Part shown: positions 10,544 through 62,619 of the stretch, piece after piece
Position numbering within the stretch: the first letter of the stretch is position 1
Layout of the letters: the number at the start of each line of letters is the position of its first letter
Notes under the pieces: model-generated
What the model was told of the DNA's origin: nothing
Database searches by the model: none
What the model saw: only the letters and a program-made list of their open reading frames with translations
Source: Selaginella moellendorffii
Taxonomy: Eukaryota; Plantae; Lycopodiophyta
NCBI RefSeq assembly: GCF_000143415.4
Contig: NW_003314367.1
Location: forward strand, 186,001-250,000
Length of the DNA: 64,000 nt
Reading direction: 5' to 3'
Translations under genes and position numbers: made by a program

Positions 10544-11081
10544 CAGATAGAGCCTTGTAGAACAGTCGTTCATTGCTTGACTGTGGGCTGAAGCTGCCTC
10601 AGCTTGCAGGGCATCTCGCATCATCATCGCATCAGCCCTCACCACTCCATGCAAGGCACCAAAATCCTGTATCACTGCAGTAGTTGCACTTGCAGAAGCA
10701 AGACTGTGCAGTAGCTATTACTAGCATCAAGCAGGATTGCACATCATGCACACTACTCGCACATCATGCTTGACGCTGGCAATAGCTACTCCCAAATCAT
10801 GCTTGAGGCTGGAAAAATCCTGCTTCAGGTTGGTAGTAGCTGCTATGAAGTCCTGTTTGAGGATGGAGGTAGCTACTCCAAAGTTCTAGTTAAGCCTGAA
10901 AAGGTCCTCCTTGAGAGCTCTATGGAGAGCTTGCAGATCCTCCTTCACTACTCCCCTGATTGAAGAAGCCATGGTGATGACGCTCTTGGTGATGACGGTA
11001 ATGAGCGGCAATGCAAACTACCGTAGTGAAAGTACAAACACCCATGGTGATTGCCACAATCACACTCACGTTCACATCCAT
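10544..11081 (-). pseudogene. TM + 11/7-residue repeat protein (family E), longest repeat variant, disrupted
   Basis: MDVNVSVIVAITMGVC then frameshift; KEDLQALHRAL-KEDLFRL*..KQDFIAATTNL-KQDFSSL-KHDLGVAIASV-KHDV; same GTAAGC donor as other E copies. Confidence 0.65.
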
Positions 11082-16537: not shown

Positions 16538-16690
16538 TGTCACGTGGACCCATTTTTGGTACCACGTGTTGCGGCTGCCCTCTCAAGCAGCCTCGACCCA
16601 CGTTCTGACTTGAACTTTCGAGCTCAGATTATTAACCGCGCGGATGTAACGGGCGACTTTAGGTTTAACACATTTTAGGGTTTGGCGGCT

Positions 16691-17773
16691 ATGGGGAGCT
16701 GAAGAAATCACACAACGACGACGAGGGTTTCTTTGATAGGCACAAAGAGATGACTGATCTGCTCACACAGATTGAGGGAGGCCTCAACCGCATCGCTGTA
16801 GTGATAGGCCCCAACAATTCAGGCAAGTCCGCTCTGCTCAAGCAGCTCAGGAAGATGTGGGATGCCAGCCCTCTTCTGAGCTGGAGCCCTCTTCTGCAGG
16901 AGGAGCCCTCTTCTCATGCTCCTCCTGGGAGCAGGAGAGCTCCCAGGAGCTCTCTTGAGAGCTCCTGGGAGAAAGAGCTCCTGGGAGCTCTCTCTCCCCC
17001 AAGAGAGAGAGAGAGAGAGAGTGAGAGAGAGCGAAAGAGAGTGAGCTAAAGGGTAGTTGCCACTAATCTCACATGCTCTTTGTTCTAACTACGAATCAGG
17101 AGTTGTGACATTTGTTGTTATGTGTTTGGCGACGAGGTTTGACAGGAATGCATTGGTGTTCTTTTCACCAAAATGCGAACGCCATGAAAAAAACGTTCAA
17201 CAGTGGAAGTCAATTGATGTGGGGCGCTTTGGTGAAAATAATGCCAAAGCATTCCTGTCAAGCTTCGTCACCAAACGCATAATAGTAAATGCCACAGCTC
17301 CCGACTCGTGGTCAGAGCAGAGGGTGTATGAAATTTGTGGCAGCTGCCCTTTGACATTTGAGAACTGTGTGATTGATGTGTTCAGGCAAGAAAGCAACAT
17401 GGAGGTGGTTCTTGAAGACATGGTGGTGGCAAAGCTGCCCATGATTCTCCTAGGACTGGAGCATGGTCATGGCTGGGAAGAGGCTAACTTCAGGGAGGTG
17501 ATGAAGCTCATTGTGGCGCATGGTGTAGTTGGGCTGTCGAAGATTTGCCACCGTATCTTCAAGTCAGACATCTCAGAGTGCTGGCGGCAGATCGAAGCAA
17601 TGCTCTCCTTCAATGTGATACATGTTCATGCGAGGGGACTGGTTTGTGATGATCTTTGAGACTTTGACAGGGGGCCTGCCATGAACTATGATTTCGTCAT
17701 GGCAAGGTCGCCTACCCACCATGTGGCTATGAAAATGTTTTGTGATGGTGTGTTTGACAAACCGGACAAATAG
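16691..17773 (+). pseudogene. STAND/ATPase_2-type ATPase copy 1, disrupted by a frameshift, low-complexity filler and an inverted duplication
   Basis: Walker A GPNNSGKS retained. Walker B region replaced by filler 16876-17047 and an inverted arm 17048-17176. Premature TGA at 17657-17659. Confidence 0.9.
17048..17352. repeat. Fold-back inverted repeat (arms ~128 bp, loop ~48 nt) derived from ATPase coding sequence
   Basis: 17048-17176 is the imperfect reverse complement of 17225-17352 (aaagggtagttgccac.. vs ..gtggcagctgcccttt). Confidence 0.9.
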
Positions 17774-30265: not shown

Positions 30266-30385
30266 TGTCACGTGGACTCATTTCTGGTACCACGTGTTGC
30301 GACCCACGTCGGAGCTTCTATTTTACCAACTTTCGAGCTCAGATTATTAGACTTTAGGTTTATCACATTTTAGGGGTTGGCGGCT

Positions 30386-31618
30386 ATGGCGGCTGAAGCG
30401 GTGAGGGAGCTGAAGAAATCGCTCAACGACGACGAGGGTTTCTTTGATAGGCACGAAGAGATGACTGATCTGCTCACACAGATTGAGGGAGGCCTCAACC
30501 GCATCGCTGTAGTGATAGGCCCCAACGATTCAGGCAAGTCCGCTCTACTCAAGCAGCTCAGGAAGATGTGGGATGCCAGCCCTCTACTGAAAGCCCAGTT
30601 GCCGCTCTTCTACGTCGACATTGCAGACTTCAGTTCCCCGGAGCAGGCTGCTGCAGAGATTGCAAGACAGATGCGAACTTGGGCTTCTTGGCTCAAAGAT
30701 GTGACGATCGGAGGTATCAGTGTCGATCTGAAGAAGCTGACATTCAAGGGCGTAAACCATGATGCATCGAGCTTTCTAGAGCTGTTAAAAGCGGAGCCAG
30801 TGACGGACTTGGGCTCTGTCATGAGTTGGTTTATGAGCCTGGCAGCTGAAAACCAGCATAGGAGGCCAATTTTTGTCATCGATGAAGTTGACAGGTTGAA
30901 GCAGTGGTCTGACCAGGATGTAGGCACCCTCCTGGGATGTTTCATAGCCATGACCAAGCAGGACCGGACTGCTATGGTGATTATGTCCACCTCCGACGAC
31001 CTTTTTCGGCAGTGGTTCCAGAGTCATACAAACGTTCAACAGTGGAAGCCAGTTGCTGTGGGGCACTTTGGTGAAAAGAATGCAAAGGCATTCCTGTCAA
31101 GCCTCGTTGCCAAGTATATAGCAGCAGGTGCTACAGCTCCCGACTCGTGGTCGGAGCAGATGGTGTATGAAATCTGTGGCGGCTGTCCTTTAACACTTGA
31201 GAACTGTGTGATCGATGTGTTCGAGGAGGGAAGCAGCATGGAGGTGGTTCTCAAAGACATGGTGGTGGCAGAGCTGCCCAAGATTCTCCTGGGACTGGAG
31301 CATGGTCATGGCTGGGAAGAGGCTAACTTCAGGGAGGTGATGAAGCTCATTGTGGCGCATGGTGTAGTTGGGCTGTCAAAGATTTGCCGTTGTATCTTCA
31401 AGTCGGACATCTCGGAGTGCCAGCGGCAGATCAAAGCGATGCTCTCCTTCAATGTGATACATGTTCGTTACATGCCGAGGGGACTGGTTTATGATGATCT
31501 TCGAGACTTTGACAGGGGGCCTGCCATGAACTGTGATTTCGTCATGGCAAGGTCGCCTACCCACCATGTGGCTATGAAAATGTTTTGTGATGGTGTGTTT
31601 GACAAACCAGACGAATAG
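30386..31618 (+). CDS. Intronless STAND-class P-loop ATPase (ATPase_2/'archaeal ATPase'-like), 410 aa, only intact copy
   Basis: FFDRHEE N-motif, Walker A IGPNDSGKS, Walker B PIFVIDEVD, sensor strand MVIMSTSD, STAND GxP motif ICGGCP, winged-helix-like C-terminus; uninterrupted ORF. Confidence 0.85.
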   Translation: MAAEAVRELKKSLNDDEGFFDRHEEMTDLLTQIEGGLNRIAVVIGPNDSGKSALLKQLRKMWDASPLLKAQLPLFYVDIADFSSPEQAAAEIARQMRTWASWLKDVTIGGISVDLKKLTFKGVNHDASSFLELLKAEPVTDLGSVMSWFMSLAAENQHRRPIFVIDEVDRLKQWSDQDVGTLLGCFIAMTKQDRTAMVIMSTSDDLFRQWFQSHTNVQQWKPVAVGHFGEKNAKAFLSSLVAKYIAAGATAPDSWSEQMVYEICGGCPLTLENCVIDVFEEGSSMEVVLKDMVVAELPKILLGLEHGHGWEEANFREVMKLIVAHGVVGLSKICRCIFKSDISECQRQIKAMLSFNVIHVRYMPRGLVYDDLRDFDRGPAMNCDFVMARSPTHHVAMKMFCDGVFDKPDE

Positions 31619-31644: not shown

Positions 31645-32481
31645 TTAATATAGAAATGTTTTGCAACCTGTGATAAGCTTCGTTTCCATCCTGCAAGGAT
31701 CCCCGTGAATGTACATCCACAGCAGCAGCGCATGCCTTTCCGTCACAGCCTTGAGTTCCTTCTTAAAAGAATGCTTCGACTTGAAGAAGACGGGGCCCTG
31801 TGCTAAGGGGGGCATTTTGATCCGGACTTGCGTGACCAGCGCTTCCAGCAGTGATCTTCTGTCACCAAAGCTGAGCCTACCGAAACAAGCACCAGACCTG
31901 CTTTCTGATCTTCTCGAGCTGCACTCGTCGCCATCGCTGTTCTCCGCCATCAAACCCACGAGTGTGCTGTCTGGACTGATTGGCAAACGCTGCTTCTGCT
32001 CGGTGAGGTCCAGTAAGAGAACGTTGCAGTTGTTGCTCCTGGCGGCTTCAAATCTCCCGAGATAGCAGTAGTCGTCCCTGTCCCTTCCGTGGAGGAAAAA
32101 CGCTAGAGATCCGTCAGGAAGGCCGAAGATCTCAAACACCGGAGCCAGAGCAACCCGCAATCCATTCCTCGAGCCCCCACCGAAAGAAATCCCCAAGTGA
32201 CATAGAATAAGTTCCCCAGCTCCGGATTCTGATGCACCCAAATACCCACCAGATTCCTGACCCCGTTGATGAATCTGAACAGCGCCTTCTGCGACTGCAG
32301 CCCATTCCTCCAAGTACCAGCCTTGGCACTGCGGGAACCAGAGCTTATCAGAGCTGCAGACGTCTCGAAGCTTGCAAGAAGTGGCGCTGAGGTTGCAGAG
32401 ATCTCTGTGACAGACGCGGCTGGATATCAACCCGAACACATCGTCCGGAAGATCAGTCAACAAGCCGTCGTGATCTTCCAT
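31645..32481 (-). pseudogene. F-box protein (At5g39450-like) fragment, frameshifted and truncated
   Basis: F-box LTDLPDDVFGLISSRVCHRDLCNLSATSCKL..LW. The conserved GIWVHQNPELGNL..WGFLS lies in another frame. PVFEI..DGS..FFLHGR follows; C-terminus missing. Confidence 0.75.
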
Positions 32482-32864
32482 CAAGGAAAAAAACAAGCTC
32501 CTCGATCACGCATCAGAGGTAACATTATCAGAGGTAACAGCAGCGACAGGAACAGCCAGCCACCAAGCCAACTCCATTCGGAAATAAACTGTTACAGAGA
32601 ATCCTCGAAAAGCGCACAAATATCACATGTTCCTCTACCATACAAAGCAATTGAACCCAGTGACTATCGGCAGCTCCAAAGGGTCTCATCCACCTACAAG
32701 AAAGTACCAATTAGACACTGCCAGGCCACGCTCATGTCTATGTTCTTGCCCGGAAAAAGACTTACTATCAGAAGCTCACGACATATAAGCCTTTTTATTT
32801 CCGAAGATCCGAATCAGAAAAAAAATTCCTGAGAAAAAAGAGAACAGTTCGTCGTTTCTATGAA

Positions 32865-47800: not shown

Positions 47801-48470
47801 TGTGGAGAAGAAAAAAACTAGGATGATAGGAAAACTAATGCTTTGCTACTGTTGTTTATAGCTTTCAACTCTAACAAAGTCATAAAGAATGAACGAATAC
47901 CTACGATGGGGATCAGACGACGTAAAAACCATGTCTTTTGGAGGCTGAAAACCACTGAGTGTCATCGCACCACCCCTCTTGTCCATCCCTCCACTGCTGC
48001 CACTAGGTGGACCACTGGGCCATTTACTCGCTCTCCTCTAGAGCTACGCCCTTTCCCTAAAGCAGCAGTGGAGATCCTCCATGCCAGGAGTGACGGTGGC
48101 AAGACTGTAGCTCCGGATCTGCTGCTGGTGCCTGTTCCTGCGGGGATTGCTGTGGCGATTGAGCAGGAGATCTCTGAGTGGAAGATCTCTGCCTAGGAGA
48201 TCCGGGAGCCACAGCTTCACTGACCATTTACTCGAGTGCATCGCTCTCTTGCCCTTTCCCTAAAGCAGTGGCGCTCCACATCGAGAGTGACGGGGCGATT
48301 TGTGCAGGAAAGACACATGTCGCTGTGCCTTCTTCTCCCGCCCCACGCAGCTTGGCCGACTCCCATTGGCAGAGAGCAAATATCAGAAAAATTTCTTGCG
48401 CAACCATGGCTACTGACCCTGGCCCGGGCCTGGGATCCAACGGTCGGGGAGCCTCCCTGCTATCACTAGA
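41888..48470 (-). mobile_element. Helitron A (formerly autonomous, 6.6 kb)
   Basis: 5' TCTAGTGATAG (minus strand, 48470); 3' hairpin CCAGCATTTGCTGG + CAATTG-CTAG (41888); inserted at A|T; encodes Rep/helicase. Confidence 0.93.
42401..46773 (-). pseudogene. Helitron Rep/PIF1 helicase, fragmented by stops and frameshifts
   Basis: NIRNFNSALAFASMG, FRIHGQIYH, VIILPSTFLGSPRVMQQYYQDA, HUH motif VIEF*KRGLPHCH, YLFQYVYKG, WDEISM, GDFRQ, QFPVRLGY, KAQGQT, VFTHGQLYVALSR. Confidence 0.95.
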
Positions 48471-48759
48471 TTATCTATCACAATAAGGAGGAGTTGCTGA
48501 AATTTCTGGGCTGCCAAATCCAGCCAATCGCAGCCGTCCGATGGGGGGTAACTGTAAAGGGGTTATTTCTTTAACCACATTTTAGTGAATAATCGCGCTG
48601 ATGTTTGCTCTTGGCCAATGGGAGGCAGCCAAGCCATGTGGGGCAGGAGAGGAAGGCGCAGCGACCCGTGTCATATGCATGTGTTCTGTAACAGATCTTG
48701 CTGGAATTCCAGCCCTCCTGCTAGAGCTCGCAGAGAAAATCCAGTGCCGATCAATGCAA

Positions 48760-60425: not shown

Positions 60426-60537
60426 TCTTTAAAAACTCAAATAAACAAAAAAACGCGATTCTTTAAACAATTTTTAAGAAAATTGTCCGAGTGTAACGGG
60501 CGACTTTAGGTTTAACACATTTTAGGGTTTGGCGGCT

Positions 60538-61731
60538 ATGGCGGCTGAAGCGGTGAGGGAGCTGAAGAAATCGCTCAACGACGACGAGGGTTTCTTTGAT
60601 AGGCACGAAGAGATGACTGATCTGCTCACACATATTGAGGGAGACAACCGCATCGCTGTAGTGCTGGGCCCCAACGATTCAGGCAAGTCCGCTCTGCTCA
60701 AGCAGCTCAGGAAGATGTGGGATACCAGCCCTTTGCTGAAAGCCCAGTTGCCGCTCTTCTACATGGACATGAGGGCTGCGGACTTCAGTTCCCCATAGCA
60801 GGCACAGATTGCAAGACAGATGCGAACTTCGGCTTTTTGGCTCATAGATGTGGCAGCTCAAAGTGCCCTGCAACTGGCTTCCATTGCTTAATGTCTATGT
60901 GACTTTAGAACCACTGCCGGAAAAGGTTGTCGAAGGTGTACATAATCACCACAACAGCCCGGTTTTGTTTGGTCATGGCTATGAAACATCCCAGGAGGGC
61001 TATGAAACATCTTAGGAAGGTGCCTATATCCTGGTCCGACCAGGTCCTGGGATGTTTCATAGCCATGACTAAGCAGGACCAGACTGTTGTGGTTATGTCC
61101 ACTTCTGATGACATTTTTTTGGCAGTGGTTTCAAAGTTACATAGACGTTGAGCAGTGAAAGCCAGTTGTTGTGGGGCACGTTAGTGAAAAGAACGCCAAG
61201 GCATTCCTGTCAAGCCTCGTTGCCAAGTGCATAGCAGTAGGTGCCACAGCTCCTGACTCATAGTCGGAGCAGAAGGTGTATGAGATCTGTGGCAGTTACC
61301 CTTTAACACTTGAGAACTGTGTGATCAATGTGTTCGAGCAGGGAAGCAGCATGGAGGTGGTTCTTGAAGATATGGTGGTGGCACAGCTGCCCATGATTCT
61401 CCTGGGACTGGAGCATGGTCACGGCTGGGAAGAGGCTAAGTTCAGGGAGGTGATGAAGCTCATTGTGGCGCATGGTGCAGTTGGGCTGTCGAAGATTTGC
61501 CGCCGTATCTTTAAGTCGGACATCTCGGAGTGCCAGCAGCAGATCAAAGCAATGCTCTCCTTCAATGTGATACATGTTCATTACATGCTGCCGGGACTGG
61601 TTTATGATGATCTTCGAGACTTTGACATGGGGCCTGCCATGAACTGTGATTTCGTCATGGCAAGGTCGCCTACCCACCATGTGGCTATGAAAATGTTTTG
61701 TGATGGTGCGTTTGACAAACCGGACGAATAG
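60538..61731 (+). pseudogene. STAND ATPase copy 3, disrupted by stops and an inverted duplication replacing the Walker B region
   Basis: GPNDSGKS retained; TAG at 60796; inverted arm 60861-61042; C-terminal part near-identical to the intact copy. Confidence 0.9.
60861..61180. repeat. Fold-back inverted repeat (arms ~135 bp) derived from ATPase coding sequence
   Basis: 60861-60995 (aagtgccctgcaactggcttcc..gaaacatcccagg) pairs with 61046-61180 (cctgggatgtttc..ccagttgttgtggggcac). Confidence 0.9.
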
Positions 61732-61789
61732 AAACTTAGAAATGTGAATATCATATTAGTCCCTAACAAAGAGAAACTTTTGCAAACGA

Positions 61790-62619
61790 TTTCAACTTTT
61801 GCTTTCCATCCTGCAAGGATCCCCGTGAATGTGCATCCACAGCAACAGCGCATGCCTTTCCGTCACAGCCTTGAGTTCCTTCTTGAAAGAATGCTTGAAG
61901 AAGACGAAGGCGGGCATTTTGATCCGGACTTGCGTGACCAGCGCTTCCAGCAGTCGTCTTCTGTCACCAAAGCTGAGCCTACCGAAACAGTACCAGACCT
62001 GCTTTCTGATCTTCTCGAGCTGCGCTCGTCGCCATCGCTGTTCTCCGCCATCAAACCCCACGATGTGCTGTCTGGACTGATTGGCAAACGCTGCTTCTGC
62101 TCGGTGATGAACGATTCCGCTTCCAGTAAGAGAACGCTGCTCCTGGCGGCTTCAAATCTCCCGGGATAGCAGTAGTCGTCCCTGTCCCTTCCGTGGAGGA
62201 AAAACGCTAGAGATCCGTCAGGAAGGCCGATGATCTCAAACACCGGACCCCAGAGCAACCCGCAATCCATTCCTCGAGGGGTGGTATGATTCGGCAGCCC
62301 ACCACCGAAAGAAATCCCCAAGTAACATAGATTAAGTTCCCCAGCTCCGGATTCTGATGCACCCAAATACCCACCAGATTCCTCACCCGTTGATGAATCT
62401 GAACAGCGCCTTCTGCGACTGCATCCCATGCCTCTAAGTGCTCAAGTCGATGTAGTCCTCCGCTTCTTCTTCTCTAACCAGCCTTTGGCACTGCGGGAAC
62501 CAGAGCTTATCAGAGCTGCAGACGTCTCGAAGCTTGCAAGAAGTGTGACAGACGCGGCTGGATGTCAACCCGAACATATCGTCCAGAAGATCAGTCAACA
62601 AGCCGTCGTGATCTCCCAT
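61790..62619 (-). pseudogene. F-box (At5g39450-like) fragment, copy 3
   Basis: Paralog of 31680-32481 with different indels. Confidence 0.75.

What the first reader, a model, noticed from the sequence alone, without database searches (positions are those of the whole stretch)
60861..61180. Dead ATPase paralog converted into a hairpin that could silence the intact ATPase (hairpin 2)
Seen: copy 3 lost the segment matching ~30705-30900 (including Walker B) and gained a ~135-bp inverted duplication matching 30930-31068 of the intact gene, still downstream of the gene's own 5' end. The arms carry dense C>T/G>A transitions (acc>act, cgg>cag, ccg>ctg, tgg>tga), whereas 61320-61731 outside the hairpin is far closer to the intact copy. 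Established: inverted duplication of target sequence is a known origin of plant hairpin siRNA and proto-MIRNA loci, and methylcytosine deamination gives such transitions. Inference: this is a paralog-derived silencer of the ATPase.
Basis: partly seen in the sequence, partly recalled or inferred. Interest (0 to 1): 0.85.

Follow-up and report, generated by a model that had tools for sequence, protein, structure and literature searches.

The report
Known miR1111 hairpin born from ATPase
This fold-back is the already catalogued spikemoss microRNA gene MIR1111; what is added here is that it was built from a broken copy of a neighbouring ATPase gene and could silence the working copy, although silencing has not been shown.

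Summary
The hairpin at 60861-61180 is real (-206.7 kcal/mol, z -22.6). It lies in a broken copy of the archaeal-type ATPase gene at 30386-31618, which lost codons 107-173 (Walker B) and folded back at a natural 5-bp palindrome. It is not a new locus: published Selaginella moellendorffii reads assigned to smo-miR1111 (225 and 43 reads) match its 3' arm exactly. Those reads are sense to the ATPase and cannot cut its mRNA, and their starts are scattered, so the locus behaves more like a young hairpin-siRNA gene than a precise microRNA. The 5' arm is antisense: 60 of 164 possible 21-mers would be acceptable guides and 11 are perfect, but no 5'-arm read list or cleavage data could be examined. Arms carry about four times more transitions than flanks (p 2e-7), enriched at non-CG cytosines and biased to G:U pairs on the + strand (19 versus 6). 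The intact gene shows purifying selection, and a second, independent hairpin (17047-17353) matches the adjacent segment. I found no paper linking MIR1111 to this ATPase. The scan noted an analogous case elsewhere in this genome (MIR1094 from a kinase). Verdict: known locus, known kind of origin, silencing about even odds.

The parts
60502..60852 (+). 5' remnant of the ATPase paralog (start codon at 60538, Walker A kept, premature stop before the junction); probable 5' part of the hairpin transcript
   Evidence: matches intact 30350-30703; translation; copy-specific contigs in runs X3, X10, X1
60853..60860 (+). Deletion/inversion junction with a few inserted letters and a 5-letter microhomology (CAAAG) shared by intact 30695-30699 and the start of the inverted arm
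   Evidence: junction print-out; crossed without differences by contigs of three runs
60861..60999 (+). 5' (left) arm, antisense to intact ATPase 30927-31070 (codons about 181-229)
60961..60981 (+). Predicted star strand of the catalogued miR1111; pairing penalty 3.0 on intact mRNA at 30945-30965
   Evidence: prediction only, no read seen
60976..60996 (+). Candidate silencing 21-mer: starts with U, in 21-nt register with the dominant read, perfect complement of intact 30930-30950
   Evidence: prediction only
61000..61044 (+). Loop: decayed second inverted copy of 30905-30949 (made by a 21-nt tandem duplication) and the original fold-back apex TGGTC-n-GACCA at 61032-61042
61045..61180 (+). 3' (right) arm, sense copy of intact 30930-31068, after loss of 30918-30929
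61062..61088 (+). smo-miR1111 region: catalogued mature inferred at 61062-61082; sequenced reads at 61066-61086 (43) and 61068-61087 (225; probably 21 nt to 61088 before U-tail trimming)
   Evidence: PMC5569507 supplements 1 and 4; exact mapping
61184..61731 (+). 3' remnant of the ATPase paralog
30386..31618 (+). Intact 410-aa archaeal-type ATPase, parent sequence and candidate target (matched segment 30905-31070)
   Evidence: Pfam ATPase_2 1.2e-16; fold like Pyrococcus 2qen and Sulfolobus SSO1545; 10 synonymous to 7 replacement lineage-specific changes
17047..17353 (+). Second, independently formed hairpin in ATPase copy 1, arms matching intact 31063-31192

Best explanation
The hairpin is smo-MIR1111, a young, species-specific small-RNA gene made from its own candidate target. 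Shown: a duplicate of the archaeal-type ATPase gene folded back at a natural TGGTC-n-GACCA palindrome, lost 200 bp including Walker B, and later gained a loop through a 12-nt deletion on one side and a 21-nt duplication on the other; the + strand yields about 21-nt RNAs. Inferred: transcription starts from the retained 5' end of the old gene; the perfect inverted repeat was methylated in all contexts, deamination produced C-to-T changes, and those giving G:U pairs in the + strand RNA were preferentially kept; a Dicer cuts the stem imprecisely into duplexes; the sense strands accumulate and were catalogued as miR1111, while antisense strands from the 5' arm (best candidate 60976-60996) guide cleavage of mRNA from the intact ATPase and its close paralogs. 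Identity as MIR1111 and origin from the ATPase are near certain (about 0.95); the confidence given is for the whole statement including real silencing.
For: Exact, copy-specific matches of published miR1111 reads to the 3' arm (the intact gene differs by 2-3 letters). G:U versus A:C mismatches 19:6 on the + strand (p 0.015), 38:14 with hairpin 1 (p 0.001); arm-specific C>T versus G>A is 16:5 while flanks of the broken copies show 8:16 (p 0.007), so the bias is specific to the stem. Deamination-type changes at CHH 13/88 versus 6/236 and CHG 7/39 versus 0/76. 60 of 164 left-arm 21-mers score 3 or better on the intact mRNA, 11 perfectly. The 25 bp next to the loop are unchanged in both arms (permutation p 0.01). 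The intact gene is under purifying selection (p 0.034). In putative RNA run X3, contigs assign to the two hairpin-bearing copies and none to the intact copy. In engineered G:U hairpins sense siRNAs outnumber antisense ones yet silencing is strong, and G:U changes prevent self-methylation of the repeat (PMC9263138).
Against: All reads seen are sense-strand; the star of the dominant read pairs only marginally with the target (penalty 4.5). No cleavage site is listed for any miR1111 candidate in the one degradome study. Expression is low (312 reads against 101,079 for miR536). The left arm is as diverged from the target as the right arm (14% versus 15%), which is not what strong selection on the antisense arm would give. 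No expression of the intact copy was seen, and its upstream motif is cut off by a retroelement end, so there may be no mRNA to silence. A>G versus T>C (7:3, p 0.34) cannot separate selection from biased mutation. No excess of target-side changes in the zone matched by this hairpin (5 of 138 shared differences).
Confidence: 0.52

Rival explanations
1. Expressed but inconsequential proto-microRNA: the fold-back is a by-product of a rearrangement-prone duplicated region, is transcribed from the inherited 5' end and diced because it is double-stranded, but regulates nothing; the intact ATPase is silent for other reasons, and the transition excess is simply decay of a methylated inverted repeat.
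For: Low, imprecise, sense-only reads; no cleavage evidence; both arms equally decayed; the window is full of inverted and tandem duplications and many similar hairpins are noted in this genome (unchecked); intact copy not seen in RNA-like contigs and its upstream motif truncated.
Against: Stem-specific G:U bias, unchanged loop-proximal 25 bp, a second independent hairpin from the same gene with the same strand bias, and purifying selection on the intact gene.
Confidence: 0.33
2. The locus acts at the DNA level: hairpin small RNAs of either strand, or repeat pairing, direct methylation onto homologous ATPase copies in some cell type and shut them off transcriptionally.
For: Non-CG deamination signature in the arms; both non-hairpin sequences are more diverged in the zone matched by hairpin 1 (intact-only changes 7/130 versus 10/607, p 0.019; copy 3 13/135 transitions); inverted repeats methylate homologous loci in trans in flowering plants (PMC9263138).
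Against: S. moellendorffii aerial tissue lacks a 24-nt peak and CHH methylation (PMC5569507); no such excess in the intact gene at the zone matched by this hairpin; copy 3's excess could be spreading from its own repeat.
Confidence: 0.1
3. The sense-strand miR1111 is the functional product and targets an antisense transcript that runs through the ATPase genes, such as a long 3' end of the convergent F-box gene.
For: miR1111 reads pair with the - strand of intact 30947-30972 at penalty 2-2.5; the source study lists one predicted target transcript for three of the four reads; an F-box gene converges on each ATPase copy.
Against: The abundant contig of the copy-3 F-box paralog stops at 61745, 14 bases short of the ATPase stop codon and 650 from the site; the study's transcripts were assembled without strand information as far as its methods show, so the predicted target may be the locus itself read backwards (inference).
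Confidence: 0.04
4. Assembly artefact.
For: Repetitive, duplicated neighbourhood; DNA-like run X5 has no contig over 61010-61080.
Against: Arms are 15% diverged from each other and from the parent; contigs from three studies cross the junction and arm exactly; sequenced small RNAs carry arm-specific letters.
Confidence: 0.01

Closest known systems
smo-MIR1111 (miRBase; kept as a species-specific family in the PmiREN-based list of PMC9698635)
   Same: It is this locus: reads named smo-miR1111 map exactly to 61066-61087, to one genomic hairpin.
   Different: No paper found that gives its origin or target (one unrelated full-text mention); the original 2007 annotation paper could not be opened, so it may already say more.
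Young plant MIRNAs born by inverted duplication of their target genes (Arabidopsis MIR161, MIR163; model of Allen et al. 2004, from my own knowledge; reviewed in PMC3237417)
   Same: Long arms still alignable to the parent gene, species-specific, imprecise processing.
   Different: Here the catalogued and most abundant product is the sense strand; the hairpin still sits inside the remains of the parent gene; targeting is not validated.
miRNAs repeatedly born from duplicated NBS-LRR genes (Zhang, Xia, Kuang, Meyers 2016, PMC5026261)
   Same: Recurrent, independent birth of hairpins from duplicates of a STAND-like NTPase gene (two in this window).
   Different: The parent is a stand-alone archaeal-type ATPase with no LRR or effector domain; the matched segments lie after Walker B, not at the P-loop; no phased secondary siRNAs are known in this species.
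Engineered G:U hairpin RNA transgenes (Zhang et al. 2022, PMC9263138)
   Same: C-to-T changes that keep RNA pairing but break the DNA inverted repeat; sense siRNAs more abundant than antisense.
   Different: Natural; the changes fall on both arms, so the antisense arm has also lost some match to the target.
Drosophila hpRNAs such as Nmy and Tmy that silence related selfish genes (from my own knowledge, not tested)
   Same: G:U-rich hairpins derived from paralogs of the target, arising more than once.
   Different: No evidence that the ATPase is selfish or harmful; different kingdom and Dicer pathway.

Membership tests
smo-MIR1111 | Sequenced miR1111 reads map exactly to the hairpin | tested here: met
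   225 and 43 reads map with 0 mismatches at 61068-61087 and 61066-61086; 3 and 2 mismatches to the intact gene
Plant MIRNA (2018 criteria, 10.1101/213314) | Single-stranded foldback not longer than 300 nt | tested here: inconclusive
   Whole foldback is 320 nt; sub-hairpins of 164 and 241 nt around the duplex fold stably
Plant MIRNA (2018 criteria) | At most five mismatches in the miRNA/star duplex, at most three asymmetric | tested here: met
   1 to 2 unpaired positions per duplex in the predicted fold
Plant MIRNA (2018 criteria) | Star strand sequenced with 2-nt overhangs | not testable with these tools
   Source study reported only reads resembling catalogued miRNAs; contigs cannot hold 21-nt reads
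Plant MIRNA (2018 criteria) | At least 75% of locus reads within 1 nt of miRNA or star | tested here: inconclusive
   For the catalogued mature it fails (listed reads are shifted by 4 and 6 nt); the dominant read is 72% of the four listed, total locus reads unknown
Plant MIRNA (2018 criteria) | Replicated in two independent libraries | tested here: inconclusive
   Locus seen in the original catalogue and in the 2017 library, but with different dominant starts
Target-derived inverted-duplication hairpin (proto-MIRNA / hairpin siRNA) | Both arms homologous to a protein-coding gene beyond the small-RNA site | tested here: met
   About 140 nt per arm at 85% identity to 30927-31070
Target-derived inverted-duplication hairpin (proto-MIRNA / hairpin siRNA) | Transcribed and processed into about 21-nt RNAs | tested here: met
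   Published reads from the + strand 3' arm; low-depth copy-specific contigs in runs guessed to be RNA
Target-derived inverted-duplication hairpin (proto-MIRNA / hairpin siRNA) | Small RNAs repress the parent gene family | not testable with these tools
   Only complementarity could be scored; no cleavage listed
Rfam microRNA families | Score at or above a family's gathering threshold | tested here: not met
   No hit in the window; only generic hairpin matches far below threshold
Archaeal-type ATPase (Pfam ATPase_2), for the parent gene | Pfam score above cut-off, Walker A and B, matching fold | tested here: met
   61.6 bits versus 33.2 cut-off; best structural matches 2qen and 2fna; family reported in Selaginella (PMC6652019)

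The most novel reading that the evidence does not exclude
One archaeal-type ATPase gene is costly enough that two independent hairpin silencers were kept beside it, and both record a natural route in which methylation of a new inverted repeat drives C-to-T decay that is filtered into G:U pairs, freeing the hairpin from self-silencing. The non-CG signature would also mean that this plant, reported to lack CHH methylation and 24-nt siRNAs in shoots, methylates such repeats in the cells that pass on mutations.
Probability: 0.2. Interest if true: 0.62.

Novelty: new member of a known kind. Interest (0 to 1): 0.36.

Why it matters
It gives a parent gene and a testable target to an orphan lycophyte microRNA, extends the inverted-duplication route of microRNA birth to a documented case outside seed plants, and suggests that the catalogued strand is the passenger. 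The breakpoints are readable in full (fold-back apex, loop creation), and the arms offer a natural test of the proposal that G:U pairs evolve to stop hairpin genes silencing themselves. It is not a new kind of system.

Tried and rejected
Rfam: no family at threshold. Word-indexed protein search found no relatives; the full HMMER search found only distant ones, best 32% identity, several of them S. moellendorffii proteins at 27-34%, too distant to be targets, so the other close copies could not be fetched. The 2007 annotation paper and the 2011 genome paper were not held; one paper had no supplements held. Literature searches for a deamination route to G:U pairs and for reproductive-tissue small RNAs in this species returned nothing. 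A general C-to-T bias on the coding strand was tested and rejected (flanks 8:16). An effector or nuclease domain on the ATPase was looked for and not found. Overlap of the F-box transcript with the miR1111 site was not supported. None of the other S. moellendorffii miR1080-1114 sequences listed in the supplement matched hairpin 1 or the 5' arm on comparison by eye; that list lacks about fifteen catalogued families.

Full report
Setting. The window holds three copies of an intronless ATPase gene on the + strand: a broken copy 1 (about 16645-17773), an intact copy (30386-31618) and a broken copy 3 (60502-61731). The intact product scores as Pfam ATPase_2, folds confidently (mean pLDDT 89) like the archaeal ATPases 2qen and SSO1545 with no added effector domain, and belongs to a family already reported in Selaginella (PMC6652019). 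An earlier scan note named the genome as Selaginella moellendorffii; this is supported here by exact matches of that species' small RNAs to the window and by the species of several nearest proteins.

Observation. Copy 3 matches the intact gene up to 30703, then carries the reverse complement of 31070-30927 (60859-60999), a second inverted piece of 30949-30905 (60998-61042), and resumes forward at 30930 (61045). Codons 107-173, including Walker B, are missing. The + strand folds at -206.7 kcal/mol (z -22.6) with 135 pairs, 19 of them G:U; the - strand folds 35 kcal/mol less well. Contigs from three studies cross the deletion junction and the left arm with no differences, and one spans the whole hairpin, 60765-61213.

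How it formed (read from the sequence; mechanism inferred). The intact gene has TGGTC-T-GACCA at 30905-30915, and the same motif sits at the apex in copy 3 (61032-61042). The simplest history is a fold-back at this natural palindrome, giving a perfect palindrome of about 160 bp per arm, joined to the upstream sequence through a short insertion and a CAAAG microhomology. A 12-nt deletion on the right (30918-30929) and a 21-nt tandem duplication on the left then made the present loop of about 45 nt.

Substitution pattern. Arms differ from the intact gene at 14-15% of sites against 5.5% in flanks. The excess is all transitions (36/279 versus 25/713, p 2e-7; transversions 5/279 versus 15/713). Deamination-type changes are enriched at CHH (13/88 versus 6/236, p 1e-4) and CHG (7/39 versus 0/76, p 4e-4), less clearly at CG (p 0.08). 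Arm-to-arm transition mismatches give G:U on the + strand 19 times and A:C 6 times (p 0.015); hairpin 1 gives 19 to 8; together p 0.001. Flanks of the broken copies lean the other way (C>T 8, G>A 16), so this is not a general strand bias (p 0.007). Whether it reflects selection on RNA pairing or strand-biased methylation of the stem cannot be settled, because A>G versus T>C changes are too few (7:3). These contexts were classified on the intact sequence, not on a reconstructed ancestor, and several tests were run, so the p values near 0.01-0.03 are suggestive only.

What it is. Supplements of You et al. 2017 (PMC5569507) list four S. moellendorffii reads under miR1111. Two map exactly to the 3' arm, at 61068-61087 (225 reads, described as a 6-nt shift from the miRBase entry) and 61066-61086 (43 reads, 4-nt shift), and differ from the intact gene by 3 and 2 letters. 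This places the catalogued mature at 61062-61082. The study trimmed 3' U runs to one letter and the genome continues with a second T, so the main read is probably 21 nt. The other two reads (20 and 24) did not map to the reference and carry a mix of hairpin and parent letters, which points to another allele or copy. MIR1111 is kept as a species-specific family in a later compilation (PMC9698635). So the locus is known, transcribed on the + strand and diced. By the 2018 criteria its status as a precise MIRNA is doubtful: 320-nt foldback, shifted starts, star not documented. A young hairpin-siRNA or proto-MIRNA is the better description.

Does it silence the ATPase? The reads seen are sense to the gene and cannot pair with its mRNA (best penalty 6.0 for any right-arm 21-mer). 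The study only reported reads resembling catalogued miRNAs, so antisense reads from the 5' arm are untested rather than absent. The 5' arm could supply guides: 60 of 164 21-mers score 3 or better and 11 are perfect. The star of the catalogued mature scores 3.0, that of the dominant read 4.5, and the next 21-mer towards the loop in the dominant register (60976-60996) begins with U and matches 30930-30950 perfectly. That loop-proximal 25 bp is unchanged in both arms (permutation p 0.01), while the unpaired duplicate of the same sequence in the loop has decayed. The intact gene looks functional at least until recently: 10 synonymous to 7 replacement lineage-specific changes, against 11 to 31 in the broken copies (p 0.034). 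In run X3, guessed to be RNA, low-depth contigs assign to copy 3 and copy 1 and none to the intact copy; this fits silencing but equally fits a gene that is off because a retroelement end has replaced its upstream sequence, and contigs show presence, not absence or strand. No cleavage site is listed for miR1111 in the study's degradome. In engineered G:U hairpins, sense siRNAs outnumber antisense ones while silencing stays strong (PMC9263138), so sense-dominated reads do not refute the idea. I put real silencing at about even odds.

Context. A second hairpin in copy 1 (17047-17353) has different breakpoints and matches the adjacent segment 31063-31192, so it arose independently; fewer of its 21-mers remain good guides (14 of 109). 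A further ATPase copy not in the window shows in runs X1 and X5 (7 differences over 61198-61288 that fit neither copy 1 nor the intact copy) and could be the real target. Repeated birth of hairpins from duplicated NTPase genes is known for NBS-LRR genes (PMC5026261). S. moellendorffii shoots are reported to lack a 24-nt peak and CHH methylation, which makes the CHH signature in the arms worth a direct look, though inverted repeats can be methylated without the usual pathway.

Verdict. Observation confirmed; interpretation partly supported. The locus is the catalogued smo-MIR1111, its origin from the ATPase is shown here and was not found in the papers I could search, and its silencing role is plausible but unproven. 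Known kind of system; moderate interest.

Noticed in passing
window 17047-17353: Independent second ATPase hairpin with the same + strand G:U bias (19 to 8) and CHH excess (18/78 versus 4/211), preceded by a GA-rich insertion (16880-17046); copy-1 contigs appear in putative RNA run X3. Not matched to any listed miRNA; may be an uncatalogued small-RNA locus.
   Followed up: partly
window 31063-31192 and 61184-61318: Both the intact gene (7/130 versus 10/607 lineage-specific changes, p 0.019) and copy 3 (13/135 transitions) are more diverged in the segment matched by hairpin 1, a possible trace of action in trans or of escape.
   Followed up: partly
window 61198-61288 (runs X1, X5) and 60546-60829 (run X5): Contigs reveal further close ATPase copies or alleles that are not in the window; one is deeper than copy 3 in run X1.
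   Followed up: partly
window 61010-61080: DNA-like run X5 has no contig over the loop and miR1111 and low depth over the arms, so the hairpin may be absent or different in that sample; a hole in contigs proves nothing.
   Followed up: no
window 30330-30385 versus 16640-16692 and 60480-60537: The upstream motif ending in a telo-box-like TAGGGTTT is intact in both hairpin copies, but in the intact gene it is cut by a retroelement end and the telo-box carries a change.
   Followed up: no
window 61745-62430, - strand: The F-box paralog next to copy 3 is covered by a deep contig in run X3 (depth 382) that ends 14 bases from the ATPase stop; its longest open stretch is 192 codons against 286 in the copy at 31645-32496.
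   Followed up: no
window 48312-48672 and 10696-10804: Two further, weaker inverted repeats (75-nt arms at 83%; about 110 nt at 71%).
   Followed up: no
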